Virus record (IMG/VR): IMGVR_UViG_3300033997_000243
Coordinates: 62,001-126,000 of that record
Direction: 5' to 3' (one strand)
Length of the DNA stretch: 64,000 nucleotides
Positions 1,049 through 46,164 of the stretch are shown piece after piece. Below the pieces are notes generated by a model. That model had not been told where the DNA came from and did not search any database. It saw only the letters and a program-made list of their open reading frames with translations. The translations under genes and the position numbers were made by a program. The stretch's first letter is position 1; each line of letters opens with the position of its first letter.

Positions 1049-1447
1049 ATGAAAATCAAAGTATTCGTTTCGCAAAGTTCGTACTCTTTGGCCAGACTTA
1101 AAGCATCTGACTCTAAATTCAGACAGTTGGCTGACGACAGATTTACTTCGTCACAAATCAAAAAACTTATGACCAAAGGAACGAAACTTCTTATGGTTGT
1201 TACAGGTGCTTACACACGTAAGGCTGATAACAAAGTAACTCCACAACTAAACAAATATACTCTTGTCATCAAAGAAGTTGAAATAGCTGGCAACGGAAAA
1301 TTAAAAAGAGTGTTGATTGCTCCAGAAGGTAAACATTCAAAAGATGAAATTAAACCTTTATCTGCGGCTGCTTTGGCAAAACTGTTGAACGGCGAAAAGG
1401 CTACTCTTAAATCTAAGAAAGGCACCAAAAGTGCTTCTCTTAAATAA
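1049..1447 (+). CDS. Lys-rich hypothetical protein with shared N-terminal leader (putative internal head protein)
   Basis: SD AAGGA; starts MKIKVFVSQSS; highly basic. Confidence 0.75.
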   Translation: MKIKVFVSQSSYSLARLKASDSKFRQLADDRFTSSQIKKLMTKGTKLLMVVTGAYTRKADNKVTPQLNKYTLVIKEVEIAGNGKLKRVLIAPEGKHSKDEIKPLSAAALAKLLNGEKATLKSKKGTKSASLK

Positions 1448-1465
1448 ATTCAATAGGAAAATCTT

Positions 1466-2293
1466 ATGAAAATTCAAGTTATGTTGTCTGAGAGCGCAGA
1501 TTTAACTGCTGCCCAAGAAAAGAAAATTGTTGTTGGCGGTACTTTTACTTTATATACAATAGTATCAACTAAAAAGACTCCACCAAGACCGAGCATTGGC
1601 TTTATTCCGAAAGAAACTATAGAGCGCTACAAAAAGATGCCTCCTGTTATAACAAAGGCGGCCACTAACTATCGTATAACCGAAGTGAATAGCACTAAAT
1701 CTGGATCAGTTAAATCCATAGTTGCTGTTGCAGAGCGTGACAATTCTCTTACACGTAAGCATCCCGGCAATTTATCAACTTTAACATTAACTAAAGCTAA
1801 ACTTTTGAGTTTAATCGGAAACAAAATAACAAAAGAAGATGTTGGAAGTCAGAGTATAACACTTACTACAAATTCTAAAGATACAACAGCATTCTTTAAC
1901 AAAACTGAGGCAAAAGACAAACAACGCATAAAAGCCTTAGATGAACAAATAGCTAAACTTCAAAAACAACGTGAAGAATTAGCTGGAGTTCAGAAAAAGC
2001 GTAACGATGCTATACACGATGCGGAATCCGCTAAGAAACGTGCTGAACTTAAAGCACAAGGCTATAGTTATTTAGTTGTTATTGAAGGTAAAGAAACAAA
2101 GAAAAAAACTTTAAGTGAAGCCCGTTCAGTCAGACCAAAGATCGGTGAAACCGCTTCGATTTTTGCTGTATTAGCAGGTAAACGCTCAAAGATTCTTACG
2201 TGGTCAGCTAAAGATCCTGTAACCAAAAGAGTCCTTAAAGGATATAATTGGTTCTTTACTTCAGCTGCTGCACAGAAAAAGTTTGATGTATGA
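1466..2293 (+). CDS. Lys-rich hypothetical protein with shared leader; central coiled coil
   Basis: SD AGGA; starts MKIQVMLSESA. Confidence 0.75.
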   Translation: MKIQVMLSESADLTAAQEKKIVVGGTFTLYTIVSTKKTPPRPSIGFIPKETIERYKKMPPVITKAATNYRITEVNSTKSGSVKSIVAVAERDNSLTRKHPGNLSTLTLTKAKLLSLIGNKITKEDVGSQSITLTTNSKDTTAFFNKTEAKDKQRIKALDEQIAKLQKQREELAGVQKKRNDAIHDAESAKKRAELKAQGYSYLVVIEGKETKKKTLSEARSVRPKIGETASIFAVLAGKRSKILTWSAKDPVTKRVLKGYNWFFTSAAAQKKFDV

Positions 2294-2330
2294 ACTTAAT
2301 GCGTTCGATTCCTACTATTAAGGCGGCCCT

Positions 2331-2933
2331 ATGAAAATCAAAGTATTTATTAGCTCTTCAAATAACAAACCTAAAAAAATTGGAGGCTCCAATTGGTTTG
2401 ATGAACTTTCAGACGAAGCTAAAAAAGAATATATTGAAGAACATCCAAATAGTCAGTACGCTAAACATCATATGCGTATGGCAAAACATAAGGAACGTAA
2501 ATCAAGGACTGGCCAATTCGCATCCGGCTTAGATCCTAGATTTGCAGAAGCATCTAAAGGTTTAGATCCTAATCTATTAAAAGAAGTATCTAAACTGGAT
2601 GACGATTTGCAGCAAAGTTTCGCCAAAAGATTTTCTGGCGCTATGGAAGAGTTTGGTTTGGATGCTGATAGTGAAGAAACAACTGCTTCACTGGAAAGTC
2701 ACAAAAATAGAGCGTTGAAAGCAAAGAAAGATGCAGAAAACGCAACTAATCCTATCGCCAAAAAGAAAGCTTTAGCTACTTTTGAGCGTGAACGAGATAA
2801 CTACAAAGAGTTAAAGCTTGCTCACCAGAAAGCTTTGGATGTTTTAAAGACTCCTGGTAAGTTGGATAAATTTAAGAATCAGCTTGGTAGACAGCTTTTA
2901 AGTAAGCTAAGTAAAGTTCAAGCGGAAGAGTAA
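2331..2933 (+). CDS. Basic hypothetical protein with shared leader
   Basis: Starts MKIKVFISSSN; WFDELSDEAKKEYIEEHPNSQYAK resembles a motif recalled from jumbo-phage virion proteins. Confidence 0.75.
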   Translation: MKIKVFISSSNNKPKKIGGSNWFDELSDEAKKEYIEEHPNSQYAKHHMRMAKHKERKSRTGQFASGLDPRFAEASKGLDPNLLKEVSKLDDDLQQSFAKRFSGAMEEFGLDADSEETTASLESHKNRALKAKKDAENATNPIAKKKALATFERERDNYKELKLAHQKALDVLKTPGKLDKFKNQLGRQLLSKLSKVQAEE

Positions 2934-2935
2934 GA

Positions 2936-3094
2936 ATGAAAAAACTCATGGTGGCTAATCTTGCTAAGAAAATTCCTGAAGATCAGCGCAATAAACGTCA
3001 ACAAAAATTAGTTGATGAAATTCCTGAGATTCATGCACGCCTTAAACAAAAAACTGGCCCCTTTGCCTTTATGCGTAAATCGAAGTTTAATTAA
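2936..3094 (+). CDS. Small basic ORF, 52 aa (MKKLMVANLAKK...RKSKFN), absent from the ORF track
   Basis: Translated by hand; fills the gap between 2933 and the terminator at about 3093. Confidence 0.6.
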   Translation: MKKLMVANLAKKIPEDQRNKRQQKLVDEIPEIHARLKQKTGPFAFMRKSKFN

Positions 3095-3113
3095 GGGCTT
3101 CGGCCCTTTTCTT
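3093..3113 (+). terminator. Intrinsic terminator with C(UUCG)G tetraloop
   Basis: AAGGGC-TTCG-GCCCTT followed by TTCTTT. Confidence 0.8.
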
Positions 3114-3124
3114 TAGGTGAGCTT

Positions 3125-3457
3125 ATGAAAATTCTTGTGAGTCTTTGTACAAGTGTAGACAGTATTCAAAAAGAAAATGGTAAACTTGTATACAAGGGAA
3201 TGACTTTCATTGATTTTGATAAACCCATTGAAATAAAGGATAAGCGCTACAAACGTGCGGTATTAGCACGTAAAGGAAATAATTTTAAACTAATAAAGTA
3301 TGGCCATGTTGACTATGAAGATTTCACTACTCACAAAGATCCTGAACGTAGAGAAAATTTTCGCAAAAGATTTCGTGGCATCTTAAAGTCTAATGGTAAG
3401 CCAGCTTATAAAGATAAATGGCAAGCTGCGTATTGGGCATACAACGATCTTTGGTAG
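3125..3457 (+). CDS. Basic protein with leader; DUF5754-like family (recalled from large DNA viruses)
   Basis: MKILVSLCTS leader; YGHVDYEDFTTHKDPERRENFRKRF...AAYWAYNDLW. Confidence 0.65.
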   Translation: MKILVSLCTSVDSIQKENGKLVYKGMTFIDFDKPIEIKDKRYKRAVLARKGNNFKLIKYGHVDYEDFTTHKDPERRENFRKRFRGILKSNGKPAYKDKWQAAYWAYNDLW

Positions 3458-3465
3458 GGAATTCT

Positions 3466-4143
3466 ATGAAGGTTAATATATTAATTTCTGAATCTGCTTC
3501 GACAACTCGTGCATTTAAAGCAAAACTTGCTGAATTAGGTTCCTTATTGTTTGAGTCAGATAATAAATTGATCAGGGAACTAAAGGTAACTAAACCTTTT
3601 GTTAAGACCATTGATGGATTAGCTTATGCTATCCGACTTGCACGTAAATCACACGTTGCTCAAAATAAAGTTGAAGAGTTAGCTACTTTGCTCGGAGTCA
3701 ATCCAGCACATATAACTTCTGCTGTGGATAAAACTGGCTATTGTCTCCACTTTAGCTCTGGTGCTGCTACCAAAGCAATTGCTACATTAAAAAGAATGGC
3801 TAAAGCCAAATCAGTTGGAGCACCTGCTAAAAAATCTAAGACCGCAGACTTCGGTTGGAATGTAGCAATCCAACAAATGACTCGTCAGAAAGAGAATATT
3901 GTTCAAGATAAAGGTCTTGAAGTTGCAGCTAAATGTAAACTGGCTTTTGCTGACCGCATTGATAAGCTTGTTGCTAAAAATACTAAAACACATGATGTCA
4001 GAAGTTTTAGTATGGAAGTTGTTGACTATCCACAAATGACAAGCACTGTCGGCACAGACGAAGTTTATATAACTGTCAAACTAAAGCTGGATCAAAAATC
4101 TCGACCTTCTCAGGGTCGTCCAGTGAAAAAAGAATTCAAGTAA
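3466..4143 (+). CDS. Basic hypothetical protein with shared leader
   Basis: Start moved from 3418 to ATG 3466 (SD AGGGA); begins MKVNILISESA. Confidence 0.75.
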   Translation: MKVNILISESASTTRAFKAKLAELGSLLFESDNKLIRELKVTKPFVKTIDGLAYAIRLARKSHVAQNKVEELATLLGVNPAHITSAVDKTGYCLHFSSGAATKAIATLKRMAKAKSVGAPAKKSKTADFGWNVAIQQMTRQKENIVQDKGLEVAAKCKLAFADRIDKLVAKNTKTHDVRSFSMEVVDYPQMTSTVGTDEVYITVKLKLDQKSRPSQGRPVKKEFK

Positions 4144-4173
4144 TTGGTCGCTCTAAAAAGAATTCAAGTAATT
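4127..4173 (+). repeat. 19-bp direct repeat AAAAAGAATTCAAGTAATT x2
   Basis: Copies at 4127-4145 and 4155-4173; the first spans the stop codon of the upstream gene. Confidence 0.85.
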
Positions 4174-4200
4174 AAATATTTTAGTTAAAGGAAATCAAAA

Positions 4201-5421
4201 ATGAAAATTCGTGTATTCACATCAACCTCAGCGCGTAAGCGTGATATTGTAGTAAATCAAGTTGGCACCAGTTTTGAAGTGTCTGTTGACGATAAAGTTC
4301 TGGTTAAGTTTACTGGCAAAGCAACACCTGATACTATTACAGAAAAATTGCAAAAGAAAGAATTCAATGGCGCAGAAATCAAACGTGTGTTTGCTCAGAT
4401 TGCTAAGCTTGGTAAAGCTGATTCCCGTGAAGTTAAGGTTAAACCTTCAGCTGCTGATTCAAAAACAAAGAAACAGCTTTTCTCTGATGCAACTGTACGT
4501 TTGGTGGCAAAAGAATTTCCAGAAGCTATAGCTACTTTAGCTCAACTGAATAAAACAGATCGTGCTAAAGCCTATGCCAGATCGCATCATGGCCTTGGTA
4601 TGGGTGTTCGGAATTTTATGCGTTCTAAGACCACAGAAAAAGCAGTGAGAAATCCTGTCACTGCCGACGATATTTGGTCAGAAGTTTTAGATCGTGCAAT
4701 CGAATTGAAACTTTATAAAGATACGGATGCTGATGTTTACCAGTTAGCAAAAATAACTGGTAATGCTGTAAAAGAGTTGGATATGGTTTTGTACAAAGAC
4801 GCAGATTCAGTGAAGAAATTAGGAGCCTCTATTGCACGTAGCTTGAAAAAAGCTTTCGGTGATGGCATGACTATTAAAGCTCGTGTACGTGAGCACTTTA
4901 GTCCGTCACCTAATGTACCTGCACACAGATACAATCACTTTGCTGTTTCCTTACCTATCAATATGATTACTGTAGGCGGCAACAATAAACTAAATATTTA
5001 TGTCGGTACTGGCATTGTAATGATCGAAGAGGATGGGCCGAAATCTACTAAGGTTACTAACCATAAACTGGTGAAAGGAACTAACGCAGAAGTTTTGGAG
5101 GCTATTACCAAGAATCTTAAGATCAAAACCAATACTGTTGAAAAACCTGCGTCAACAGGAAAATTCAATGAAGCAAGTCAATATGTTGTTGATAAATTCG
5201 GCAAAGATCTTAAGGCAAAAGGTATTGACTTAATACCTACACCTGGTGGCATTAGTTTTTATCATCCACGTCGCGGAACCGTTAAAGCACGTTTCGGAAT
5301 CAAAAATGGTAAGATGATGCACATGACTAAGTATAAGGCCAGTTTTGGTGAAACTTTTGACATGAGTAAACCAATTAGTAAAGCTGTTATCAGCAAAATT
5401 GTCGCTCCCTTACTTAAATAA
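4201..5421 (+). CDS. Basic hypothetical protein with shared leader
   Basis: SD AAGGA; starts MKIRVFTSTSA. Confidence 0.8.
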   Translation: MKIRVFTSTSARKRDIVVNQVGTSFEVSVDDKVLVKFTGKATPDTITEKLQKKEFNGAEIKRVFAQIAKLGKADSREVKVKPSAADSKTKKQLFSDATVRLVAKEFPEAIATLAQLNKTDRAKAYARSHHGLGMGVRNFMRSKTTEKAVRNPVTADDIWSEVLDRAIELKLYKDTDADVYQLAKITGNAVKELDMVLYKDADSVKKLGASIARSLKKAFGDGMTIKARVREHFSPSPNVPAHRYNHFAVSLPINMITVGGNNKLNIYVGTGIVMIEEDGPKSTKVTNHKLVKGTNAEVLEAITKNLKIKTNTVEKPASTGKFNEASQYVVDKFGKDLKAKGIDLIPTPGGISFYHPRRGTVKARFGIKNGKMMHMTKYKASFGETFDMSKPISKAVISKIVAPLLK

Positions 5422-5434
5422 TTTTTCCATAGGA

Positions 5435-5603
5435 TAAGGAGGTGATCCATATCTCGTGGTAACTACACCACGTTAAAGAAGGTAGTAGAGCAACCGCTCC
5501 GCTGCATAGAGTCAGTGATTTGATCAACTTTAACTGGAGATCATTATGAAGGCACTTCTTATCTAAACTTTATTTCAAGAGCATTCTTTTGGGTGCTCTT
5601 TCT
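5435..5603 (+). ncRNA. Candidate structured small RNA or leader element (16S 3'-end complement, pseudoknot, mini-ORF, terminal hairpin)
   Basis: TAAGGAGGTGATCCA 5435-5449; stem CGTGGT/ACCACG whose loop ACTAC is complementary to GTAGT 5482-5486; hairpin AAGAGCATTC-TTTT-GGGTGCTCTT 5577-5600. Confidence 0.45.
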
Positions 5604-5629
5604 AATAAGGTTTCCACTAAGGAACAAAT

Positions 5630-6286
5630 ATGAAAATTCGTGTATTCATTTCAGAATCAAGTCAAGAAGATGAAGAGTTTCAAAGAATTTGCGCGTTGTA
5701 CCTTGAGCGTCAATCCGTAGTACGTGCTTTAGGTGAAATCGACCGTGTGGTAAACGCCACAACTCAGGACGCAAACGAAATAGAAAGTGATAAAAGCTTT
5801 AATACTCGTAAACGAAATCTTCAGGAAGAGGTTGCAAAGTTTGATCTTGAAATCTCAAATCTCAAACGCAGAATTTTATACGGTACTTCTCCGTGGAAAA
5901 GTAAAGATAGCGAGTGGGTTAAAGAATTTATAGCAAAATGTTCTACCTCACTTATTGCCAATCCTTCACTAATACAAGCGAATAATGAAACCCAGTATAT
6001 AGAAGTAGCTTCAAAACTTCGCAGAGAGTTACTTGATAGTGTTAGAATGATCGCAAACTTTAAAAGCGAAAATATAGCTAATCTGTTATACGCTTGCGCT
6101 AAGTTTTATTTGGATATGTCAAACAGCGGTCAAAGTTCTTTATCTCAAGTTACGTATTCGGCTGCTGTAACCGAATTGCATAAAGTTCTTGAGTTATATG
6201 AACCTATTCTTATTCGTATATACAAACACGGCATTCGTAAAGATTACATGAAAGTGTTTGCTCAGGTTTTCAAGAATTTTGGTTAA
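5630..6286 (+). CDS. Helical hypothetical protein with shared leader
   Basis: SD AAGGA; starts MKIRVFISESS. Confidence 0.8.
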   Translation: MKIRVFISESSQEDEEFQRICALYLERQSVVRALGEIDRVVNATTQDANEIESDKSFNTRKRNLQEEVAKFDLEISNLKRRILYGTSPWKSKDSEWVKEFIAKCSTSLIANPSLIQANNETQYIEVASKLRRELLDSVRMIANFKSENIANLLYACAKFYLDMSNSGQSSLSQVTYSAAVTELHKVLELYEPILIRIYKHGIRKDYMKVFAQVFKNFG

Positions 6287-8952: not shown

Positions 8953-8963
8953 AAGGAAAAACA

Positions 8964-13205: not shown

Positions 13206-13252
13206 TAGTTACTGATTAAAACTTGAATCAAATTTTTGTGGAGAAATACAGT

Positions 13253-14347
13253 ATGAAAACCAATTTACAAGTCGGCGCTTCTTATCAACTGAAGAACGGC
13301 GCACCTTTGCACGATCTTCGTTTTGCCGGACAAGGTATGGCTGCACTTTCATCTAACGGTGAAATTAACGCATCAAGCAATGCAGATCTGTTAAAACAAA
13401 TTGGCCAACTTTTACAATCAGTATCAAGCGGTACTGTTGTTCAAGCTGCAACGCCTGATTCTTTCCTGTCATTATCTGCCGAGCAGAAACGTGATATTTT
13501 AGTTGCCGCAAAAGCATGTCCTAATAAGTGGGCTGCTTTAGGTGCTCACATTGCTGCTGACGTTCGTGAACAAGCAAGTCGTCAAGGTTTTTCACGCAAT
13601 CTGTGTGTGATCAATAACCTGAAGCAAGGTGAAACTCAAAAAGTTCCAATGCCTCGCCATCAAGCTAAAGCCGTTTTAGCTACTGGCCCAACTTCAATTT
13701 CTTACCAAATGATGCGTGATAAATATTTCACGCCACCAGAGTTTGAATTGAAAGCTGCTGTTCGCGTGAACAAACTGGATTTGGGTCAAGCGACTCACGA
13801 TCTGTTAGACCACGCTTACAACGATGCTGTTGAAGGTATGATCACTGCTGCTGACCGCGTGTGGAAACGTGCTGCTGATGCAACTGTAGGTAAAGCAAAT
13901 ACTTTAGCTGCTTTCGCTGGTGCATTTACTCCTGCCGTTATCGCTCGTGCTTCAACACAAATTCGTGATTGGAACTTACCAGTAAGTCGCGCTGTTATCG
14001 CAAACAGTTTTTGGGAAGATATTCAATCTGAAGGTGCCTGGGCCAATACACTGACTCCAGTATCTCAGTACGAATTAGTTATGACTGGCCGTGTTGCAAC
14101 TATCTTCGGTCTGGAATTAACTACTGACGGTTTCCGTCCTGAAAACCAACGTGTTCTGTCTCGCGGTGAAGCGTACATTGTTGCTGATAATGAATATCAC
14201 GCAACTTTAGGTTCTCGCGGTGGCATTGAATCTACTCCGACCGATGGTGCAAACCAAGGCGATACAACTAAGGGCTGGTTACTGTCAGAGGTTATGTCTC
14301 TGATAATTCCAAATACTCGCTCTGTAGTTAAAATGCAAAAGCTGTAA
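13253..14347 (+). CDS. Major capsid protein (HK97 fold)
   Basis: Start moved to ATG 13253 (SD GGAG); SRQGFSRNL..L.QG...P, ATGPT...FTPPEF, AADRVWK and TG.V.TIFG.EL.TDGFR motifs recalled from PaBG/Y3-type jumbo MCPs; position. Confidence 0.85.
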   Translation: MKTNLQVGASYQLKNGAPLHDLRFAGQGMAALSSNGEINASSNADLLKQIGQLLQSVSSGTVVQAATPDSFLSLSAEQKRDILVAAKACPNKWAALGAHIAADVREQASRQGFSRNLCVINNLKQGETQKVPMPRHQAKAVLATGPTSISYQMMRDKYFTPPEFELKAAVRVNKLDLGQATHDLLDHAYNDAVEGMITAADRVWKRAADATVGKANTLAAFAGAFTPAVIARASTQIRDWNLPVSRAVIANSFWEDIQSEGAWANTLTPVSQYELVMTGRVATIFGLELTTDGFRPENQRVLSRGEAYIVADNEYHATLGSRGGIESTPTDGANQGDTTKGWLLSEVMSLIIPNTRSVVKMQKL

Positions 14348-18282: not shown

Positions 18283-18963
18283 ATGCTTATTGTAGTCTCC
18301 GCTACAAATAAAAGAAGTGTCAAAGATTTTGACTGGTATAAATTCAAAGGTAAAAGATCCGTTGACATACCTAAGTCAAATCCTGAAGCCGACATTTCAG
18401 AAAACGATATATTCGGAGTTAGAAAAGTTGGTGAAAACTATCAACTGATCTTCAAAGAATATCCTGAAATCCTTTTCCGCCTCAGCGAAAAAATTGCCTT
18501 ACTTGTTCTCAAGCGTTCAATTGGTTGGACTGGTACTGTCTCCAAGATAAAAGTATTTGCTGGTAGTCTTGGTGGTGCTGAACCTAAACCTGCGAACACT
18601 TTGCTAGACAATAAACCTTTTGTTCCACCAAAGGAACCGAAAAGCGTAAAGGCTAAATTTATTGCACCCGAAGAAAATGCTGCACTTACTAAAAAGCTTA
18701 AGTCCTTAGATATTGACGGAATGAAGAGTATTAAGTTCCTTCAGGCACAAGAATTGATTCCTGGAGAAATAGTGTATTACTATGAAATCCGAAATGTTTA
18801 CAATCAATATTTGAAAAACAATGGCTTTAGAGTAGCACCTAAAAACTGGGGTGACGAAATAGAAGCTTTAATTGAAAGTATGGAACCTGATTTAGATATT
18901 GAGTGTAATACTGTTCGTTATCTTGGCGAAGTAAAACACATAATGTCTGTTGCAGAGGAGTAA
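18283..18963 (+). CDS. Hypothetical protein with leader-like start; N-terminal domain paralogous to an internal domain of 34345
   Basis: MLIVVSAT; DFDWYKF...DIFGVRKVG...LIFKEYPEILFRLSEK. Confidence 0.75.
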   Translation: MLIVVSATNKRSVKDFDWYKFKGKRSVDIPKSNPEADISENDIFGVRKVGENYQLIFKEYPEILFRLSEKIALLVLKRSIGWTGTVSKIKVFAGSLGGAEPKPANTLLDNKPFVPPKEPKSVKAKFIAPEENAALTKKLKSLDIDGMKSIKFLQAQELIPGEIVYYYEIRNVYNQYLKNNGFRVAPKNWGDEIEALIESMEPDLDIECNTVRYLGEVKHIMSVAEE

Positions 18964-33407: not shown

Positions 33408-33790
33408 ATCTTGACGCTAATAAGTTTCTATCCGATTGGACAAGAAACAAAACAAATTTAAGTATTATTGCTGTGAAATTTCTTGACGAAGTTAAACCCA
33501 ATTCTGTTCTCAAAGGTTTAAAATCTAAAGCACTGAGATTTGTGCCTGTTCTTCCAAATAAAAATGCACAAATAGAAAAACTTGTCAAGAAGTCAGCTAC
33601 AGTTTTTGCTACACAAGGTAAGCCAAAACCTTTAGGTGAGATATTTAATACGCTCGATGCTGTTTCAGAAAAATTTCCAAAAGAGAGCGTATTTGAGGTA
33701 ATGGTTTTTATTCAAGGCTTCGACGATTCCACGGATGCCGAAACTTACGAGTACGTGTTTACTCTAATGATTAAAAAGGTTGAGAAATGA
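33398..33790 (+). CDS. Hypothetical protein
   Basis: Coupled ORF, 130 aa. Confidence 0.6.
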   Translation: MRIDLDANKFLSDWTRNKTNLSIIAVKFLDEVKPNSVLKGLKSKALRFVPVLPNKNAQIEKLVKKSATVFATQGKPKPLGEIFNTLDAVSEKFPKESVFEVMVFIQGFDDSTDAETYEYVFTLMIKKVEK

Positions 33791-34335
33791 GAATATTAAT
33801 TAGTCTATCCAGTAAGGCTATTCGTATTGAGCAGTCGTTCGGGCCTCTGCATCTTAAAGTACAACGTGCTGACAGAAATATGTATGCAGTAAGTTGGACA
33901 AATAAAATGAAAAATGCTACTGCAAACTTTGCTAAGATGGGACAAAAGAATTATCTTGTGAGTTCAGCTGGCCCTAATCTTCCAGAAACTCAATTAGATA
34001 CGAAAGATTTAAAGCAAGGTCTGCTAATGTTCTTTGGCAATTGCAGTATTTTAAAAGTTGCTGATGAACAAGTATTGGCCGCACGTAAATGGATAGGTGA
34101 AATCATTAAAGATTACGAAGGCGTACATTCTTTGAATATTCGTATTGCTGTTCGTGGTCGTGAGCAAGATAACTTGCACCTACCTGTTACATACGGGCCA
34201 GCTGGTCAAAAGAAGAAGGGTATTTTGCTTTATATTCTGCCGCTCAGCGAGAAATGTCGAGTCATGGTATTGAACGAAGATGGTTCCAAAGGAAATGTCT
34301 TAGAAATGCCTAAAGATCAAATTTGGATAGATTAA
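33787..34335 (+). CDS. Hypothetical protein with shared leader
   Basis: Starts MRILISLSS. Confidence 0.75.
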   Translation: MRILISLSSKAIRIEQSFGPLHLKVQRADRNMYAVSWTNKMKNATANFAKMGQKNYLVSSAGPNLPETQLDTKDLKQGLLMFFGNCSILKVADEQVLAARKWIGEIIKDYEGVHSLNIRIAVRGREQDNLHLPVTYGPAGQKKKGILLYILPLSEKCRVMVLNEDGSKGNVLEMPKDQIWID

Positions 34336-34344: not shown

Positions 34345-37140
34345 ATGTTTCCACACATTCAAAAGAAAATAGATCGTTTGCAGTCTTTAGGTATGGTAGC
34401 CACTTGTTCAGTTGGTTGCGGTTCTACAAATGCACTGGTTGGCGGATCTACCTGCAAAATAGAGGGTATTCCAAAACTACATCACAGAGACAATTATATG
34501 TACTGTGAAGAAACTGGTGTTTACTACACTATTGATCGCAATTACATTGGAACCAAACCTGTGATTGCCGCATTACAATTGCTGGATGTTATTGAACCTG
34601 AATTGGCCTGTGCCGAAGATGTAGTCTGCTCTGTGGGTTATTCTCGCTTTTTAGAATCTTGGGTTCAATGGTCTATGCACGGACTTTCAATTCACAGATG
34701 CCGTGAAGATGCTGCCGAATTTAGTAAAATGATTGGCGATTTCAACATTAGTATCGAATCTGAGTTTAATGTTGACAAGTTATTTGCTCAGCGGTTTTTA
34801 ACCAGCCCAAGTATGACTCGTATTCTTGAAACCGTTGCCACTCGCTTGCAGAATCCAATAGCAACAGAAAAACATACTGTTGATCCTGAGCTAAAAGAAA
34901 TTTGCGATCAAGAAGAATCTACTCCAATGGAATTAAAACTTCAGGCGTTACGTGAACGTCGCGGTGAAACTCCTGAAGAATTTGAAAACCTTATTCGTGA
35001 TAACCTGCCAACTCCTGAGCAAAATGAAGTGTTTAAGGAAATGTTTGGCGATTTAGTTTCTTTGTTTGAACAAAAATCTGCACCACAACCTGTTCAAGTT
35101 CGTACTGTTGGTGGCCCATACCATTCTGACCACGGAAAGATAAGTGGCGAACACAAACAGCATAACGTAGATTCAAACAAAAGTGTGTTCAACAATCGTC
35201 GTCAAAGCGGTGATCATATACAGCATGGTGTACCGACTGACGCAAAACCAACTATTCCAACGAAGCCTCAAATGAATCGTTCAAAAATTAGTGGTGAGCA
35301 TATTCAACAAGGCCACCCAAATCCACCTACTCTTTATGTGACAAGTAGCGATTTGCGTTCACAAAGTTCTGACACTGTTCACGATTATACTTGGATGCGT
35401 TACAGTCCACCGAATGGGCGAAGCCGTCACTTCAATAATCACCATCGTCAGCACGAAATGTCTTTGGACATGAATGAAGTGTTTGGTTATCGTGCGATTC
35501 GTGGTGGTGAATTTTATGTTGTGTTTGAAGATAATCGCAACATAAAATTCAAATTAAGTGCGAAAGAAATGGAATCGGTTTTAAAAGTTTGTAAACCATT
35601 CCGTGGTAAAGTTGAAGGTCAGGTTATTCAACGTAAAGAAGTACCAATTCCAAAACTTTCTACTGATCGTCCATTGACACCAAAAGAAAAACAGAAACTT
35701 GCTGAGTTAGAAGCCGCTAAGAAAAAAGTGGAACCTAAGTTAAAGAATTCTGTTATCACTGGTGAGGGCAAAATTGATTTAAGTCGTGTATCTCAAGAAG
35801 AAGCTTTGAGCCGTGATACAACTTATGTTGGTTTCTTTCAATCTTCTGCATTTGCTGATGACTTTGATGTGTTCATGGATGATGATAAAGAAGATTTAGA
35901 AGATGAACTGCTTGACGCAATGCGCCGTACTAAAAATGGTATTCCAGTTTCTTATGTAATGAAGGTTAAAACAAGTTTACCTTGGGTACGCTCATTATTA
36001 GGTACTTCTGGAAAAATGCGTTTACATACTCAAGTTGCACAAAGAATTCTTGCTACACAAAAGCATGAAAAATTAGAAGCTGGAATAAACATAGAGCATT
36101 TTAAAGAACGTCCAGAGCAACCAAATTCAGGAAAGTTCAAACGCAAAGAACCTTTGTATTACGGCAACAGTTTTGCCGTGCTTTCTGAAGTTAAGCAAGC
36201 TATTCTGGCCGGACACTTTACTAAAGCTTTCCGAATCACGCAGATAACAGGTAAGTCGTCGATTAATATTGACAACAAGTTAGCTGCACAAGATCCTAGC
36301 TTTGGTATTGTATCTAATGATCCATCAAACGATGATTTCATGCTGGTACTTGCTGCTCAGAATGACAACCCGCTTTATCAACACGAAGCTGAAGAGATAC
36401 AAGGTCGGTTAGCCAGAGTTTATGGGCCAGCACTTAAATCTATTGTGAAGCATACTAAAACTTCACAAAATGGATCTGGTGTGTTGTTTGTTGTTATTAA
36501 ACTGAATCTTGCTCGTCGTCCTGATGTTGATATTGCGCGTAGCCGTAAGCTTCATAAACTTGTACAAAACATTCTTGAAAATAAACAAGGTGTTGCCAAG
36601 AAAAGTCTGGCTGAATCTGAGTTGTTAAAACTCAGTGAGCAAATGAGTGCCTTACGTAAGAATGCGGCTGCTGATGCAAGTATCTTAAAGGATAAGTTTG
36701 AAACACAACGCACTACCTTAAAGAACAGTATCATCCGTGCTAAAACTATTGCAAACCAACGTACAGTAAATCCAGCAGGTTCTGCTCGTGCTGCAAAAGA
36801 TTTAGTGCGTCATCAAACAGCTTTACAAAGTTTAGATCAGGAATATGAATTTGAACTGACTAATCTTGAGCGCAAAACAGAAGAAGCTGTTGCTAAAATT
36901 CAAAACAAAATCGATGCCATGACATCTGCTAAAGATTTCCGTTATAGCAGCGAATTAGTTTTGAATGTTCCTATCTATGCGATTAAAACAGGAACCGGCA
37001 CTTTTGTTTCGGTTGAAGCTGTTGACTATAGCATTCCAGATGGAACGATTGGTGTGCGTACTGTTCGTGGTAAAGATCGTACTATTACTCAAGTAAAAGA
37101 ACTTTACACATTTAACGGCCATTCTAAGGTTTTCCCTTAG
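34345..37140 (+). CDS. Large multidomain hypothetical (probable virion) protein, 931 aa
   Basis: His-rich repeats; domain shared with 18283 directly after RSQSS; C-terminal coiled coil. Confidence 0.8.
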   Translation: MFPHIQKKIDRLQSLGMVATCSVGCGSTNALVGGSTCKIEGIPKLHHRDNYMYCEETGVYYTIDRNYIGTKPVIAALQLLDVIEPELACAEDVVCSVGYSRFLESWVQWSMHGLSIHRCREDAAEFSKMIGDFNISIESEFNVDKLFAQRFLTSPSMTRILETVATRLQNPIATEKHTVDPELKEICDQEESTPMELKLQALRERRGETPEEFENLIRDNLPTPEQNEVFKEMFGDLVSLFEQKSAPQPVQVRTVGGPYHSDHGKISGEHKQHNVDSNKSVFNNRRQSGDHIQHGVPTDAKPTIPTKPQMNRSKISGEHIQQGHPNPPTLYVTSSDLRSQSSDTVHDYTWMRYSPPNGRSRHFNNHHRQHEMSLDMNEVFGYRAIRGGEFYVVFEDNRNIKFKLSAKEMESVLKVCKPFRGKVEGQVIQRKEVPIPKLSTDRPLTPKEKQKLAELEAAKKKVEPKLKNSVITGEGKIDLSRVSQEEALSRDTTYVGFFQSSAFADDFDVFMDDDKEDLEDELLDAMRRTKNGIPVSYVMKVKTSLPWVRSLLGTSGKMRLHTQVAQRILATQKHEKLEAGINIEHFKERPEQPNSGKFKRKEPLYYGNSFAVLSEVKQAILAGHFTKAFRITQITGKSSINIDNKLAAQDPSFGIVSNDPSNDDFMLVLAAQNDNPLYQHEAEEIQGRLARVYGPALKSIVKHTKTSQNGSGVLFVVIKLNLARRPDVDIARSRKLHKLVQNILENKQGVAKKSLAESELLKLSEQMSALRKNAAADASILKDKFETQRTTLKNSIIRAKTIANQRTVNPAGSARAAKDLVRHQTALQSLDQEYEFELTNLERKTEEAVAKIQNKIDAMTSAKDFRYSSELVLNVPIYAIKTGTGTFVSVEAVDYSIPDGTIGVRTVRGKDRTITQVKELYTFNGHSKVFP

Positions 37141-37189: not shown

Positions 37190-37966
37190 ATGCCAGAAAC
37201 TGCACTGCTTCAAATGTTCTTCGATAAAATAAATAATAACAGCATGACTCTACCTACTCTTCCAGATATTGCAATTAAAGTAATGGAAGTTACGGATAGA
37301 CAAGAAGTAAACGCGCAGTTGCTTGTTAGTGTGTTGATGCGAGATAGTGCATTATCTTTGCGACTTATTCGATTAGCAAACAGCGCTCATTTTAATAGAA
37401 GAGTTCCTGTGGAAACTGTACATCAAGCAGTTGTTCGCATAGGATTTACTCAAGTAAAAGCTTTGGTTGTTGCTATGGCTATGGAACAACTTTTTATTTC
37501 GGCTGATCCTTATATATCTAAAATACTGAAAAGTGTTTGGGATGACAGTGTGCGTATTACAGCATACGCGATAGCGCTATCTCAGGTTAGAAAGAATACC
37601 AAAATATTTGAACCTCTTATGTTGTTAGGGGTTACAAGTAGAATAGGGATGTTAGCCATTTTATGTGAAATGGAAAAATCTTTTAATCGTTCAATGTTCA
37701 AAGATTTAGATTTATCTAATCTACAGGTAATTGAAAAATCAGTTACTCTTAAGATTTTTGAAACATGGGATTTTCCAGAAGAATTGCGTACAGCCGTGAC
37801 GAACTATTTTCAAGGTAATGAAGTCGGAATAGCTGAGTACGTAATATTTTCCAGCTTGTATGGAGGCAAACCCAGTGCCGATTATACAAGCCAGCGTTAC
37901 GTGGCTCCAGATAAATTGCCTGAACTTGAAAAAATAGCTGCGGAAGTTAAAGCTATATTTGCTTAA
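37190..37966 (+). CDS. HDOD-domain protein (degenerate HD motif)
   Basis: LPTLPDIA.KV.........L...L.RD.AL..RL.RLANSA.F.....V.TV.QAV.RIG. Confidence 0.9.
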   Translation: MPETALLQMFFDKINNNSMTLPTLPDIAIKVMEVTDRQEVNAQLLVSVLMRDSALSLRLIRLANSAHFNRRVPVETVHQAVVRIGFTQVKALVVAMAMEQLFISADPYISKILKSVWDDSVRITAYAIALSQVRKNTKIFEPLMLLGVTSRIGMLAILCEMEKSFNRSMFKDLDLSNLQVIEKSVTLKIFETWDFPEELRTAVTNYFQGNEVGIAEYVIFSSLYGGKPSADYTSQRYVAPDKLPELEKIAAEVKAIFA

Positions 37967-37974
37967 GGAATTTT

Positions 37975-39642
37975 ATGATTATTTCAATTTCTGCTGTGAG
38001 TAAAAACTCTACAGAATCATTCATCAAACTTGTAGCCAGTTCAATAATGGTGTGTTTGATTGAAGAACCTTTGGGCGCTAAAGTTAAATCTAAGATCCGT
38101 AAGTGGAATTCAGACGCCGAAGAATTTTTGAAAAGATTTCGTATTCCAAGATCAACTTTCAATCCTATAGTAAATGGCTGCTTAAACGACAATGCCGATA
38201 TGGATTGGGATCTTGATGCTTTAATTCGTGTTCTGAAAGAACGTGAAAAAGCTGGTATGCTTACAAAAGAGTTGGATCTTACCAAAGACCATATTGATCT
38301 TTTGAAGTATATGATGGGTATTGTACTTCGTGGGAGTGACGCAAGTTTAAAAAATCTTACTCGTCATATTAGTAAACTTGGTGATCCTGATCTAACAGCT
38401 GTTTTCCTTCACGAAGATGCTGAGCAAAGTAACCAACAAGATTTAGTTGCAGAACTTAATAAATTCTGCCGTAAAATCTTCGGTAAGCCTGAAGCCGACT
38501 TAACTGTCGAAGATAAAAATTCGTTACGTGACAAAAAACCTGAACAGTATAAAGTTTTCCTGAAATTAATGCGGGACATTAACGAAGGGACAAAGCAAGC
38601 AACATTAAGCTTTGTCCGACAAAGTGGTGAAAAGCTTGTTAAGGCTACAGAGTTAGTTCGCTATCTAAAGCAGAACAAAATTCGCAGCAAAGTGCCTGAA
38701 GGATTCAATGGTTACGTTGATGAAAACGGTGCTTATTACAACACGAACAAAGTAAAACTTGATGGTGCTATAACAGGCCGCTTAGAAGCAAATCCTAAGT
38801 ACGATCCTGAATTGGATAACACTTACGTTTTCCTTCACTATCCACTGTTTGGTACTGGGCAGCCTCAACGTATTTACACAGTTGAGTATCGCAAAGAGAA
38901 GGCGGGTAAAAAGTTTAACACTGTTGATGCACTAATAAAAGATCTTCCGGCTGCCCGTAAAAAATGGTTGCATGAATTAAAGACAGGTCATTATGAAGAT
39001 GCTGACACTGTATCTGCTTTAATTCTTGAACTTATTTACGAAACCTCTGCTCGTATTGGTACTGCTGGTCAAAGTGGTCAAGGCATTAGCACGTTGGTAT
39101 GTAAAAACTATACTTCTCGTGGAACCGGATATTTCACATTGAATTATTTGGGCAAGAGTGGCGTTAAACAAATTCATAAAATACATACTAATAAGCCTGA
39201 AGGCAAAATGATGAAGGGGTTATTAGATAGTTTGGTTGAAGGTAAAAAGCCAAATGATTTAATAATGACTGCTCAATTCGGTCGTGCTGTTAAGCATGTG
39301 AATGGTACTTACGTAAATAAATATTTGCGTTCGTTAGGTGTAGATCAAAGCATTACACTTCACAAATTCCGACATGCCCGTGGAACCATTGTTGCAGGTG
39401 CTGTTCTTGATAAAGCTCCGGCTTTCCGTGGTAAATCTGAAGCCGAAATAAATAAATGGTTTATTGAGGCCATGAAAAAAGTTGGTGAAGAATTAGGTCA
39501 TGTTAACGGTGAAAAAGTAACTGCTACTACTGCAATTCAAAACTATATTGATCCAAACTTAATTAAAGAATGGTTCGAGAAAGTTGGTGCTCGTCCGAAC
39601 AGCACTATTCAAAAAGCAATCAACAAAGTAGCTAAGGATTAA
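37975..39642 (+). CDS. DNA topoisomerase IB-like tyrosine transesterase with N-terminal extension and leader
   Basis: ETSARIG (R), G.STL, YLGKSG (K), HKFRH (R), LGH (H), NYIDP (Tyr); starts MIISISAVS. Confidence 0.8.
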   Translation: MIISISAVSKNSTESFIKLVASSIMVCLIEEPLGAKVKSKIRKWNSDAEEFLKRFRIPRSTFNPIVNGCLNDNADMDWDLDALIRVLKEREKAGMLTKELDLTKDHIDLLKYMMGIVLRGSDASLKNLTRHISKLGDPDLTAVFLHEDAEQSNQQDLVAELNKFCRKIFGKPEADLTVEDKNSLRDKKPEQYKVFLKLMRDINEGTKQATLSFVRQSGEKLVKATELVRYLKQNKIRSKVPEGFNGYVDENGAYYNTNKVKLDGAITGRLEANPKYDPELDNTYVFLHYPLFGTGQPQRIYTVEYRKEKAGKKFNTVDALIKDLPAARKKWLHELKTGHYEDADTVSALILELIYETSARIGTAGQSGQGISTLVCKNYTSRGTGYFTLNYLGKSGVKQIHKIHTNKPEGKMMKGLLDSLVEGKKPNDLIMTAQFGRAVKHVNGTYVNKYLRSLGVDQSITLHKFRHARGTIVAGAVLDKAPAFRGKSEAEINKWFIEAMKKVGEELGHVNGEKVTATTAIQNYIDPNLIKEWFEKVGARPNSTIQKAINKVAKD

Positions 39643-40846: not shown

Positions 40847-41341
40847 ATGAAAATTTTAATCAGTTTGTCTGGCGAGAAATTTTATCGTGGAATAAATGGT
40901 AAATTTTCTACTGACTACCAAAACAAAAGCCATATAATTTGGGTCACATTAAATGCCAAATATGCTTTGCAGTATGGCGATCATTTAATGGAATATGACA
41001 TAAACTTAGGCCAAGGATTTAATTTTGGCTTTCGTACACTTGATGCTCAAGTGACCTTTAGTGAAATCATTTCCAGAATAAAGCAAGGTATCCTAGATTC
41101 CTATAAAAAATTTAACCTTGTATCAAAAGATAAAGCGCTGACACTGTACAATGAGTTAAATTCATTAAATCATGGTGGCCATAAAAAAGTTTGGGAGTGG
41201 TATCAGACTGAGCCAAAACTTGCTGAATTGTTATTGAAGTCTGGATACACTCATATAGATGCACTTGAAGGAAAATACAACGACATAAGAACTGTTGGTA
41301 TTCTTAAAAAGAGCATTATAAAGGGAAACAAATCATTATGA
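40847..41341 (+). CDS. ADP-ribosyltransferase-fold (ART-PolyVal-like) protein with shared leader
   Basis: MKILISLSG leader; FYRG, W.T.N..YA.QYG.....Y.I, L.K.GY..I. Confidence 0.55.
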   Translation: MKILISLSGEKFYRGINGKFSTDYQNKSHIIWVTLNAKYALQYGDHLMEYDINLGQGFNFGFRTLDAQVTFSEIISRIKQGILDSYKKFNLVSKDKALTLYNELNSLNHGGHKKVWEWYQTEPKLAELLLKSGYTHIDALEGKYNDIRTVGILKKSIIKGNKSL

Positions 41342-42840: not shown

Positions 42841-43229
42841 AAGTTAAAGTATTTGTAGCTAAGGCCACCAATCTGAGAAATAAACCGTTAAGTGAATACT
42901 CACAGCGCGAAGAGTTACGGAAATTTTGGCCGTTGCGTGATGCTATTGTTGTAGGGAACATGCAGGAAAAGCAACTGATAAATATGATTCGAGATCTTAT
43001 TGACTGGTACTACGATGCTAAAGATGAACGTGACGAAAATTTAGCATTAGCTTGTGTTGAGTTAATGCGTACTCGTGGAGTAACCAGACGCTTACCTCAA
43101 ATTGCGGCAGTAAATGCAGAATTCAACAATTCACCTACTTACAAACATTGGTCAAAGATAACACTGGCAGCCAGTATAGCCGAAAATAAAATCATTTTAG
43201 CTAATCGTAAACCAGAGGACAGATTTTAA
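42837..43229 (+). CDS. Hypothetical protein with leader variant
   Basis: Starts MKVKVFVAKAT. Confidence 0.7.
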   Translation: MKVKVFVAKATNLRNKPLSEYSQREELRKFWPLRDAIVVGNMQEKQLINMIRDLIDWYYDAKDERDENLALACVELMRTRGVTRRLPQIAAVNAEFNNSPTYKHWSKITLAASIAENKIILANRKPEDRF

Positions 43230-43588
43230 TGTTCCGAGCAAAAGTTGTAGATAAGTCTGTTGTATTTTTCTGTGTAGGTTGTAATCTTGAACATGCTGTC
43301 AACATAGATGTTACGAAGAATCCTAAATGGGTATTCAATTTTAATCTGAATACACCTACTCTTAAACCTTCGGTGGATATTAAATCATGTAATCCAGATT
43401 TAAGTCCTGAACTTGAAGAAGAATACGACAGAATTTCTGTATTACCTAATGGAAGAAATTTGGTTTTGAATGATCCACGGTTTAGAACAGTGTGTCATTC
43501 TTTTATTGAAAATGGAAAGATTCGATATTTACCTGATTGTACTCACAGTTACGCAGGTCAAACAGTCGAACTTCCAGCTAAGTATTAG
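43229..43588 (+). CDS. DUF6527-like Cys/His metal-binding protein
   Basis: FFC.GC...H.V.......W.FN.N...PTL.PS...CHSFI..GKI.YL.DCTH..AGQTVELP. Confidence 0.75.
   Translation: MFRAKVVDKSVVFFCVGCNLEHAVNIDVTKNPKWVFNFNLNTPTLKPSVDIKSCNPDLSPELEEEYDRISVLPNGRNLVLNDPRFRTVCHSFIENGKIRYLPDCTHSYAGQTVELPAKY

Positions 43589-44240: not shown

Positions 44241-46164
<1,924 letters not shown>

What the first reader, a model, noticed from the sequence alone, without database searches (positions are those of the whole stretch)
37975..39642. Topoisomerase IB-like enzyme carrying the packaging-type leader and hybrid catalytic motifs
Seen: leader MIISISAVS and a ~290-aa N-terminal extension. TopIB-type RIG, GKSG and YIDP motifs are present, but with HKFRH and LGH as in tyrosine recombinases and protelomerases (TopIB usually has KxxR). 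There are 15 rather than the usual 9 residues between His and the Tyr nucleophile. Inference: a virion-delivered enzyme acting on the incoming genome (relaxation for early transcription, end joining, circularisation or hairpin resolution), reminiscent of the poxvirus packaged TopIB.
Basis: partly seen in the sequence, partly recalled or inferred. Interest (0 to 1): 0.7.

Follow-up and report, generated by a model that had tools for sequence, protein, structure and literature searches.

The report
Jumbo-phage topoisomerase IB with head-targeting-like leader
This gene encodes a genuine type IB DNA topoisomerase of a little-studied jumbo-phage clade, and its short N-terminal tag matches a motif found on about 20 other basic proteins and at the capsid protein's expected maturation site, so it may be packed into the phage head, which is unproven.

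Summary

The catalytic pentad R360-K394-R466-H509-Y524 is (near-)invariant in 150 relatives. HxxR in place of KxxR is typical of the clade (134 H, 13 K) and has switched at least 12 times, so it is a tolerated variant and not a hybrid mechanism. The His-Tyr gap of 15 lies at the known variable insertion point of TopIBs.

The "290-aa extension" has two parts: about 80 aa of ordinary TopIB cap domain, plus a 220-aa all-helical domain with no fold match.

The family is already annotated in PaBG, Lu11, phiRSL1 and NCTB, and has at least 565 metagenomic representatives.

The leader core (hydrophobic-hydrophobic-S-hydrophobic-S-A) is real. It sits at 12 or more N-termini of unrelated, basic proteins. 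It also occurs inside the major capsid protein, where about 20% is expected to be cleaved off. This supports a T4-like head-targeting and protease-site propeptide, but only circumstantially. A protelomerase or recombinase role is not supported.

The parts
37975..39642 (+). TopIB gene, 555 aa (P0001)
   Evidence: ORF list; PF01028 E=1.1e-15, 58.1 bits against a cut-off of 23.7; phrog_23460 over the full length, 7.6e-121
37965..37969 (+). AAGGA ribosome-binding site, overlapping the stop codon of the upstream HDOD gene
   Evidence: sequence read
37975..38001 (+). N-terminal leader MIISISAVS (aa 1-9), core IISISA
   Evidence: coil with low pLDDT in the AF2 model (residues 1-4 below 50); matches the genome-wide N-terminal motif; related forms occur in orthologues
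38002..38625 (+). family-specific all-helical N-terminal domain (aa 10-217)
38635..38880 (+). TopIB N-terminal beta (cap) domain, aa 221-302
   Evidence: beta strands in the model; aligns with human Top1 339-433 and variola 34-80; G246, N273 and T302 are conserved
38881..39639 (+). TopIB catalytic domain, aa 303-555
39052..39054 (+). Arg360 (SARIG), catalytic Arg I
   Evidence: 150/150 invariant; aligned to the R of RVG in TopIB structures
39154..39156 (+). Lys394 (GKSG), catalytic Lys
   Evidence: 149/150; aligned to the GK of TopIBs
39361..39372 (+). His463-x-x-Arg466 (HKFR); Arg466 is catalytic Arg II
   Evidence: R466 150/150; H463 is H in 134, K in 13, R in 2, Y in 1; at least 12 independent H-to-K/R changes; cellular and pox TopIBs have K here
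39499..39501 (+). His509 (LGH), catalytic His
   Evidence: 150/150; aligned to LNH/CNH of archaeal and Leishmania TopIB and LGN of Deinococcus
39544..39546 (+). Tyr524 (NYIDP), nucleophile
   Evidence: 150/150; aligned to the RNYIDP / LNYLDP Tyr of archaeal and human TopIB
13223..14347 (+). major capsid protein gene (probable true start at Met11, nt 13253)
   Evidence: 44% identity to PaBG gp80 MCP; phrog_2522 1.8e-82
13463..13480 (+). FLSLSA inside the MCP, at the expected maturation-cleavage position (about 21% of the chain)
   Evidence: conserved as F-[MA]-S-L-S-x in 18 clade MCPs within a variable linker; PaBG MCP loses about 20% on maturation (PMC7412058)
8964..10007 (+). 347-aa protein with leader MIISLSVSA, next to the head module
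   Evidence: the NCTB orthologue starts MKIVSISAQKPALP
33787..34335 (+). 182-aa protein with leader MRILISLSS
   Evidence: the orthologue in L042 starts MKIFISLSS
40847..41341 (+). 164-aa protein with leader MKILISLSG
18283..18963 (+). 226-aa protein with leader MLIVVSATN and a KMPT-N domain
   Evidence: PF20294, 3e-12
3125..3457 (+). 110-aa protein with leader MKILVSLCT; DUF5754 and phrog_220 'minor head protein and DNA pilot'
1049..6286 (+). cluster of basic proteins with the variant leader MKI[KRQ]V[FM]xSxS (starts at 1049, 1466, 2331, 4201, 5630), just upstream of the head genes

Best explanation
The gene encodes a working-type IB DNA topoisomerase of a phage-specific clade found in jumbo myophages of the PaBG/Lu11/NCTB ('Lupandier') and phiRSL1 lineages. 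By homology, Tyr524 attacks one DNA strand to form a 3'-phosphotyrosyl link, with Arg360, Lys394, Arg466 and His509 stabilising the transition state. The cut strand swivels and is then resealed, which relaxes supercoils without ATP. His463 (HxxR) takes the place of the usual Lys and is a tolerated clade variant. The 15-residue His-Tyr spacer is a small beta hairpin at the usual TopIB insertion point. A 220-aa helical domain of unknown fold precedes the normal cap domain. Inferred, not shown: the first 7-9 residues (core IISISA) form a short propeptide of the same kind as on about 20 other basic proteins of this phage. This propeptide is recognised by the head-assembly and maturation machinery, as the T4 capsid-targeting sequence is. 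Under this model the enzyme is loaded into the prohead, trimmed, and delivered with the DNA, where it could relax the incoming genome for early transcription or replication, or act on host DNA. My probabilities: TopIB enzyme about 0.9; head-packaged about 0.45.

For: Leader. The core motif is at 12 N-termini against about 0.3 expected. Codons differ between copies, so the peptide itself is selected. The carriers are unrelated beyond the leader. They are basic: median pI 9.5 against 6.7, P=5.5e-8. The TopIB leader is an unstructured tail in the model.

Link to head maturation. The same motif FLSLSA sits about 21% into the major capsid protein. It is conserved there in 18 clade MCPs within a variable linker. 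PaBG MCP loses about 20% on maturation (PMC7412058). In Lu11 and HRDY3 both the MCP site (Q[VI]ATASS) and the TopIB N-terminus (IAVAAAS / IAAAAP) are Ala-rich versions.

Context. The gene lies in the structural strand block (tail sheath, baseplate, MCP). It sits next to Acb1, MmcB-like, a KMPT-N protein and an HDOD protein. In PaBG and NCTB it lies 4-5 genes from the MCP and head genes. Some leader proteins carry domains typical of injected polyvalent proteins (KMPT-N, DUF5754/'DNA pilot'). TopIB homologues occur fused to Tad6, SprT-like and DUF5661. The phage has a separate type II topoisomerase in its replication region, so this enzyme is an extra one.
Against: There is no proteomic evidence for any member. 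The text of the PaBG virion study (14 proteins) does not mention gp84, and its table could not be read. The nearest listed relative (P0002, 70% identity) starts MYSQSAVSK and has lost the hydrophobic positions, while its neighbours keep MKILVSxS leaders. Only 27 of 134 family representatives show even a loose motif before helix 1. PaBG has the motif only on its TopIB and not on other proteins. The exact MCP cleavage site is unknown. No prohead protease was recognised by Pfam S77 or S78. One leader protein looks like a P-loop kinase (weak AAA_33 match), which is not an obvious head protein. On a PSSM anchored at Met and built from MKILVSLSA leaders, the TopIB scores about 0 bits (rank 21 of 410); the match appears only when a 2-residue shift is allowed.
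Confidence: 0.5

Rival explanations
1. It is an ordinary intracellular TopIB. The enzyme works only inside the infected cell in late infection, relaxing supercoils during replication, late transcription or headful packaging, and is not in the virion. The N-terminal motif is simply a family-specific N-terminus, or serves another purpose such as partner binding or turnover.
For: Every defining feature of a relaxing TopIB is present. The leader is absent or degenerate in most family members and in the closest relative. There are no virion data. Late-operon placement is also compatible with a packaging-time or late role.
Against: The phage already encodes a type II topoisomerase beside its replication genes. 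The motif is shared with the MCP maturation region and with more than 20 basic orphan proteins. Homologues are fused to modules typical of delivered proteins.
Confidence: 0.35
2. It is an injected effector aimed at the host or at host defences. The enzyme is delivered with the DNA but acts on the host chromosome (for example by collapsing supercoiling to shut off host transcription), or it counters a DNA-topology-sensing defence, and does not serve the phage genome.
For: Its neighbours are anti-defence genes (Acb1 1.4e-27; a Tad6-like/KMPT-N 931-aa protein). A homologue is fused to the Thoeris inhibitor domain Tad6 (3.4e-35). An HDOD protein is co-transcribed upstream and this arrangement is conserved in L042.
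Against: This is guilt by association only. The Tad6 match of the neighbouring gene is weak (E=0.0039; pairwise E=0.007). Nothing in the protein indicates host specificity.
Confidence: 0.1
3. It is a site-specific recombinase or protelomerase-like enzyme. Under this view the HxxR and LGH motifs mark a tyrosine-recombinase chemistry used for circularisation, end joining or hairpin telomere resolution.
For: HxxR and LGH resemble recombinase boxes. PF00589 gives a sub-threshold hit (24.7 bits against 27.1).
Confidence: 0.03

Closest known systems
Phage TopIB of PaBG gp84, Lu11 gp197, phage NCTB, phiRSL1 ORF108 and Motura (PHROG 23460)
   Same: Full-length homology at 27-34% identity, with the same three-part architecture, the same invariant residues including HxxR and LGH, and the same NYIDP tyrosine box. 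This is the family noted by Iyer et al. 2021 as a 'phage-specific version of topoisomerase I' (PMC7824862).
   Different: This copy lies about 24 kb from the MCP instead of 4-5 genes away. Its phage has spread a similar N-terminal motif to about 20 other proteins, which PaBG has not. No paper found in the held library reports a biochemical characterisation of any member.
Poxvirus (vaccinia/variola) TopIB
   Different: The poxvirus enzyme has KxxR and 9 residues between His and Tyr, lacks the 220-aa helical domain, and has no cleavable leader. Its packaging is proven, whereas here it is only inferred.
Archaeal and eukaryotic TopIB (Caldiarchaeum 6Z01, human Top1)
   Different: Their insertion is a 60-90 residue linker, not a 6-10 residue hairpin. 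Their cap has core subdomain II in place of the phage helical domain. They have KxxR.
Bacterial TopIB (Deinococcus radiodurans 2F4Q/3M4A)
   Different: It has Asn in place of the His, KxxR, a spacing of 9, and no N-terminal extension.
T4 capsid-targeting sequence of internal proteins (MKTYQEFIAE, cut by gp21 at L/I-x-E)
   Same: A leader of about 10 residues is shared by unrelated, basic, small proteins. It ends in a motif that also occurs at the capsid protein's maturation site. The T4 facts come from established knowledge.
   Different: The sequence is different (hydrophobic-S-hydrophobic-S-A, small residues instead of Glu). No recognisable gp21-type protease was found. Nothing has been tested experimentally.
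Tyrosine recombinases (XerH/XerD, Cre, lambda Int)
   Different: The structural score is clearly lower. PF00589 is below threshold. The N-terminal domain type differs. There is no evidence for recombination sites.

Membership tests
Type IB topoisomerase | Profile match to the TopIB catalytic core above the curated threshold | tested here: met
   PF01028 at 58.1 bits against 23.7; PDB TopIB profile hits at 8e-21 and 7e-18
Type IB topoisomerase | Catalytic pentad Arg-Lys-Arg-His/Asn-Tyr in order | tested here: met
   R360, K394, R466, H509 and Y524 align to the pentad of solved TopIBs and are invariant or 149/150
Type IB topoisomerase | TopIB fold of catalytic domain plus beta cap domain, closer to TopIB than to recombinases | tested here: met
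Type IB topoisomerase | Lys three residues before Arg II (KxxR) | tested here: not met
   The protein has H463 (HKFR). In the family the count is H 134, K 13, R 2, Y 1, with at least 12 switches, so this is a variable position and not a family-excluding one
Type IB topoisomerase | ATP-independent relaxation through a 3'-phosphotyrosyl intermediate | not testable with these tools
   Requires enzyme assays
Tyrosine recombinase (Phage_integrase) | Profile match above threshold | tested here: not met
   PF00589 at 24.7 bits against a cut-off of 27.1; 20.9 bits in the genome scan
Tyrosine recombinase (Phage_integrase) | R-K-HxxR-H/W-Y signature | tested here: met
   HKFR and LGH are present, but the same residues also fit TopIB
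Tyrosine recombinase (Phage_integrase) | N-terminal core-binding (SAM-like) domain, and a fold nearest to recombinases | tested here: not met
Protelomerase / telomere resolvase | Structural or sequence similarity to TelK/ResT, and a genome with hairpin ends | tested here: not met
   No such entry among the Foldseek/VIA matches and no Pfam hit. The termini show a 127-bp direct overlap and no inverted repeat. The read-based end test was inconclusive
T4-type capsid-targeting / prohead-protease propeptide | Short N-terminal peptide shared by otherwise unrelated proteins | tested here: met
   12 to about 20 N-termini carry it; only one pair of carriers is paralogous
T4-type capsid-targeting / prohead-protease propeptide | The motif coincides with the maturation cleavage site of the capsid protein | tested here: inconclusive
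   FLSLSA lies about 21% into the MCP and is conserved in the clade. PaBG MCP loses about 20% (PMC7412058). The real cleavage site is unknown
T4-type capsid-targeting / prohead-protease propeptide | Carrier proteins are present in heads and are trimmed by a prohead protease | not testable with these tools
   No virion proteome exists for this phage; no S77 or S78 protease was detected by Pfam
Polyvalent (co-injected multi-domain) proteins | TopIB module joined to known polyvalent-protein modules | tested here: inconclusive
   This does not hold for this protein, which stands alone. Homologues are fused to Tad6, SprT-like and DUF5661. TopIB is not listed in Iyer 2017

The most novel reading that the evidence does not exclude
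The hydrophobic-S-hydrophobic-S-A peptide is a previously undescribed capsid-targeting and prohead-protease signal of the Lupandier-type jumbo phages. It would mark a whole cargo of about 20 basic proteins, including a topoisomerase IB, for loading into the head and delivery with the DNA. That would make this the first phage known to carry a packaged TopIB, a parallel to poxviruses. The clade, which keeps the recombinase-type HxxR, could also be the 'missing' viral TopIB lineage that Forterre and Gadelle (PMC2647321) postulated as the source of bacterial TopIB.
Probability: 0.3. Interest if true: 0.75.

Novelty: new member of a known kind. Interest (0 to 1): 0.45.

Why it matters
No paper found in the held library characterises a phage TopIB biochemically, yet this clade is large: at least 565 representative clusters at 50% identity, on contigs of 200-320 kb. 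If the leader is a head-targeting signal, it would give a simple sequence rule for predicting the injected protein cargo of a whole group of jumbo phages, and a tag for loading foreign proteins into their heads. A virion-borne topoisomerase would show how a 300-kb genome is made ready for transcription on entry. The H/K interchange at the HxxR position is a natural experiment on the step that separates topoisomerases from recombinases. If packaging is disproved, this is an ordinary accessory topoisomerase with an unexplained helical domain.

Tried and rejected
1. Nucleotide search against phages found no near match.
2. NCBIfam gave nothing.
3. A Met-anchored PSSM built from MKILVSLSA leaders scored the TopIB at about 0 bits. 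I replaced it with a shift-tolerant core motif.
4. A DNA-pattern scan for the leader in PaBG, Lu11, RSL1 and NCTB found only two NCTB sites. Whole-proteome scans followed: NCTB has 4 N-terminal cases and PaBG none besides its TopIB variant.
5. tblastn of two large leader proteins found only one NCTB orthologue, with no virion annotation.
6. Pfam on nine leader proteins outside the window gave no domains except a weak AAA_33 match.
7. Literature searches for a virion-associated phage TopIB found none. The PaBG virion table is not held as text. The Matilda preprint was irrelevant.
8. Fold searches for the helical domain found no meaningful match. The Atlas feature hits to Topoisom_I_N score 0.77, below the level a third of shuffled proteins reach with their first hit, so they are only a lead.
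9. Prohead protease families S77 and S78 were not found.
10. Contigs of four runs laid on the genome end broke at a short repeat, so the test of the ends is inconclusive.
11. The link between the Tad6 domain of P0038 and the neighbouring 931-aa protein is weak (E=0.007).
12. Model coordinates are not exposed, so active-site distances could not be measured.
13. No complex prediction was run, because no specific partner could be justified.
Full report
**The object**

Window 37975-39642 (+) is a clean 555-aa ORF (P0001). It starts at the first ATG after an in-frame stop, and an AAGGA ribosome-binding site lies 6-10 nt upstream (37965-37969), overlapping the stop codon of the preceding HDOD gene. 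The 110-aa antisense ORF over its 5' end is a shadow of this gene.

The window is part of a 319,518-bp IMG/VR virus record, of which it covers bases 62001-126000. The tail sheath is 45.6% identical to that of phage NCTB and 38% to the Erwinia and Dickeya jumbo phages. The major capsid protein is 44% identical to PaBG gp80. The genome is therefore a new member of the 'Lupandier' group of jumbo myophages (PMC7412058). The same DNA occurs in subsurface and wastewater metagenomes.

**Checking the observation**

All quoted motifs are present:
- MIISISAVS at 1-9
- SARIG at 358-362
- GKSG at 393-396
- HKFRH at 463-467
- LGH at 507-509
- NYIDP at 523-527

The His-to-Tyr distance is 15.

A profile of nine phage orthologues was aligned to solved TopIBs. 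Archaeal, Leishmania, human and Deinococcus enzymes have K where the phage has H463 (AKVFRT or AKDFRT). Deinococcus has 9 residues between the Asn/His position and Tyr.

**What it is**

Pfam Topoisom_I scores 58.1 bits against a cut-off of 23.7, while Phage_integrase stays below its threshold at 24.7 against 27.1. PHROG 23460 matches over the full length.

|---|---|
| Human Top1 | 25.5 |
| Caldiarchaeum TopIB | 22.6 |
| Deinococcus TopIB | 20.7 |
| Variola TopIB | 20.2 |
| Best tyrosine recombinase (XerH) | 14.0 |
| Cre | about 12.5 |

No protelomerase appears. Across 150 family representatives, R360, R466, H509 and Y524 are invariant and K394 is present in 149 of 150. This is a TopIB.

**The 'hybrid' motifs**

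H463 is His in 134 of 150 relatives, Lys in 13, Arg in 2 and Tyr in 1. On a maximum-likelihood tree of the catalytic domain, the non-His states need at least 12 independent changes. His and Lys are therefore interchangeable at this position. That fits a supporting rather than mechanism-defining role, and it argues against a distinct recombinase-like chemistry.

The His-Tyr spacer is 15 residues in 86 members and 19-20 in 54. In the model it forms a small beta hairpin followed by the helix that carries Tyr524. Human and archaeal TopIBs have a far longer His-Tyr gap in the same alignments, so the spacing varies across the superfamily. The tyrosine box T-A-I-x-N-Y-I-D-P resembles the archaeal and eukaryotic box (TSLRNYIDP, TSKLNYLDP) more than the bacterial one.

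**The N-terminal 'extension'**

Residues 221-302 are beta-rich and superpose on the cap domain of human (339-433) and variola (34-80) enzymes. They are ordinary TopIB.

Residues 10-217 form eleven helices, modelled with pLDDT 94 when folded alone. This domain has no convincing counterpart:
- AFDB cluster E-values are all above 0.4;
- no PDB sequence hit was found.

A language-model search pointed weakly (0.77) at Topoisom_I_N. That is below the 0.8 that a third of shuffled proteins reach with their first hit. The function of this domain is unknown.

**How common the family is**

tblastn finds full-length homologues annotated as topoisomerase I or IB in PaBG, Lu11, NCTB, HRDY3, Xanthomonas and Erwinia phages, Motura, phiRSL1, BCSR5 and Rhizobium phages. 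An exhaustive HMMER scan of 1.84 billion representatives finds 565 hits, 224 of them below 1e-30. Many lie on contigs of 200-314 kb.

Iyer et al. [quoted passage not shown] The protein is thus a new member of a known but uncharacterised kind.

**The leader**

A regular-expression scan showed many genes of this phage begin MKILVSLSA or a close variant. With a shift-tolerant core, [ILVF][ILV]S[ILVT]S[AVGS], there are 21 matches in 102,908 residues of 410 gene-like ORFs. Twelve lie within four residues of an initiator Met, the TopIB (MIISISAV) among them. About 0.3 would be expected if placement were random.

Further properties of the leader and its carriers:
- Synonymous codons differ between copies (AGT or AGC against TCT or TCA for Ser), so the peptide itself is conserved, not the DNA.
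- A variant class, MKI[KRQ]V[FM]xSxS, heads five genes clustered just upstream of the head genes.
- All-against-all BLAST finds only one paralogous pair among 22 carriers.
- The carriers are strikingly basic: median pI 9.5 against 6.7 for the rest of the proteome, Mann-Whitney P=5.5e-8.
- Two carry domains known from co-injected polyvalent proteins: KMPT-N, and DUF5754 with PHROG 220 'minor head protein and DNA pilot'.
- In the TopIB model the leader is an unstructured, low-confidence tail ahead of helix 1, which is how a free linear signal would look.

**Link to head maturation**

One internal match to the core motif lies in the major capsid protein (window 13223-14347; phrog_2522 at 1.8e-82). 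The sequence there reads ...TPDSFLSLSA/EQKRDIL. This is residues 71-76 of the 364-aa protein counted from Met11, or 21% of the chain.

The PaBG study reports that its capsid protein loses about 20% of its mass on maturation and that several virion proteins are proteolytically processed (PMC7412058).

In 18 capsid proteins of this clade (57-99% identity) the site is conserved as F-[MA]-S-L-S-x, within an otherwise variable linker.

In Lu11 and HRDY3 the same capsid position reads Q-[VI]-A-T-A-S-S, and their TopIB N-termini read H-I-A-V-A-A-A-S and S-I-A-A-A-A-P. This is a parallel shift from Ser to Ala in both proteins.

The simplest reading is that this motif (a hydrophobic residue followed by small residues at alternate positions) is recognised by the head maturation machinery. 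The leaders would then be short propeptides that direct cargo into the prohead and are trimmed off, as the T4 capsid-targeting sequence does (established knowledge). This is inference. The real cleavage site is unknown, and no S77 or S78 protease was detected.

**Evidence that weakens the TopIB's membership of the leader class**

- The nearest listed relative (P0002, 70% identity) begins MYSQSAVSK, while genes around it keep MKILVSSSS, MKIFISLSS and MKILVSISA.
- Other close relatives have LLSISAVSK, LMISESAVSK and FYSQSAVAK. The constant part in the TopIB is S-x-S-A-V-x-K, not the hydrophobic strand.
- Only 27 of 134 family representatives show a loose motif before helix 1. That is still about 12 times the background.
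- PaBG has the motif only on its TopIB.
- In fusion proteins the motif is internal, sitting at the junction with an N-terminal Tad6 domain (P0038: IDWESMSSSS). This fits a cleavage site as well as it fits a structural linker.

**Context**

The gene is the last large gene but a few of the plus-strand block. That block holds the capsid, tail sheath and baseplate genes.

Its immediate neighbours, with window start coordinates, are:
- Acb1, an anti-CBASS protein (32291; 1.4e-27)
- an MmcB-like nuclease (32760)
- a leader protein (33787)
- a 931-aa protein with KMPT-N and a weak Tad6-like match (34345)
- an HDOD protein (37190)

The order is conserved in a related contig. In PaBG and NCTB the TopIB sits 4-5 genes from the capsid and head genes.

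The phage also encodes a two-subunit type II topoisomerase at 264-268 kb and has no other tyrosine-recombinase-fold gene. The TopIB is therefore an additional topoisomerase placed among structural and anti-defence genes.

**Genome ends**

The 'direct terminal repeat' is an exact 127-bp overlap with no inverted repeat. That is what a circular assembly produces. The PaBG paper describes that genome as circularly permuted. Contigs from three other samples break at a short repeat near the record's end, which settles nothing. There is no support for hairpin telomeres.

**Verdict**

This is a real TopIB of a known, unstudied phage clade. Its odd motifs are variations the clade tolerates. The idea that it is a virion-delivered enzyme is plausible and gains indirect support from the capsid-site coincidence, but it remains untested. 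I put it at about 0.45.

Noticed in passing
window 1049-6286, 3125, 8964, 17947, 18283, 33787, 40847, 42837; genome 194555-198254 (-), 242248-242769 (-), 318727-318936 (+): About 20 unrelated, mostly orphan, basic proteins begin with MKILVSLSA-like or MKI[KR]VFxSxS-like leaders. Seven of them are tandem small genes at 194.5-198.3 kb. Conservation is at the peptide level, because codons differ between copies.
   Followed up: partly
window 13463-13480 (MCP aa 71-76 counted from Met11): The leader core FLSLSA recurs inside the major capsid protein, at the position where about 20% of the chain would be removed on maturation. It is conserved as F-[MA]-S-L-S-x in clade MCPs, and Ala-rich equivalents occur in PaBG, Lu11 and HRDY3.
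   Followed up: partly
window 32291-32758: An Acb1 (anti-CBASS phosphodiesterase) homologue, PF23474 at 1.4e-27, is followed by an MmcB-like nuclease at 32760-33407.
   Followed up: no
window 34345-37140: A 931-aa protein carries a KMPT-N domain (3.5e-7) and a weak Tad6-like N-terminus (0.0039). It looks like a polyvalent or injected anti-defence protein and is conserved in the related contig L042.
   Followed up: partly
window 37190-37966: An HDOD-domain protein (8.6e-34) lies immediately upstream of the TopIB, with its stop codon overlapping the TopIB ribosome-binding site. An HDOD domain was not an expected find in a phage structural block. The pairing with TopIB is conserved in L042 and L043.
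   Followed up: no
window 44241-45848 (-): A phage-encoded GroEL-type chaperonin (Cpn60_TCP1, 2.8e-72) sits at the strand switch, which is also where the GC skew flips at about 44 kb.
   Followed up: no
window 8930-8963, 3090-3124; genome about 198255-198290: GGGC-TTCG-GCCC hairpins followed by TTAAGGAAA precede several leader genes. They may be terminator-plus-RBS or late regulatory modules.
   Followed up: no
window 2331-2933, and homologues P0016, P0020, P0049, P0067: The motif W-[FW]-x-x-L-S-x-E-x-Q-K-x-Y-x-x-x-H-P-x-S occurs in a leader protein of this phage, and also N-terminal to the TopIB module in several fused homologues. Its identity is unknown.
   Followed up: no
window 43229-43588; L042 9823-10179: DUF6527 proteins (PF20137) occur downstream of the TopIB. 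In the relative L042 this gene lies directly after the TopIB.
   Followed up: no
genome 1-127 and 319392-319518: The terminal direct repeat is exactly 127 bp, a typical assembler k-mer overlap. The IMG/VR 'DTR' label probably reflects a circular assembly and not physical ends.
   Followed up: partly
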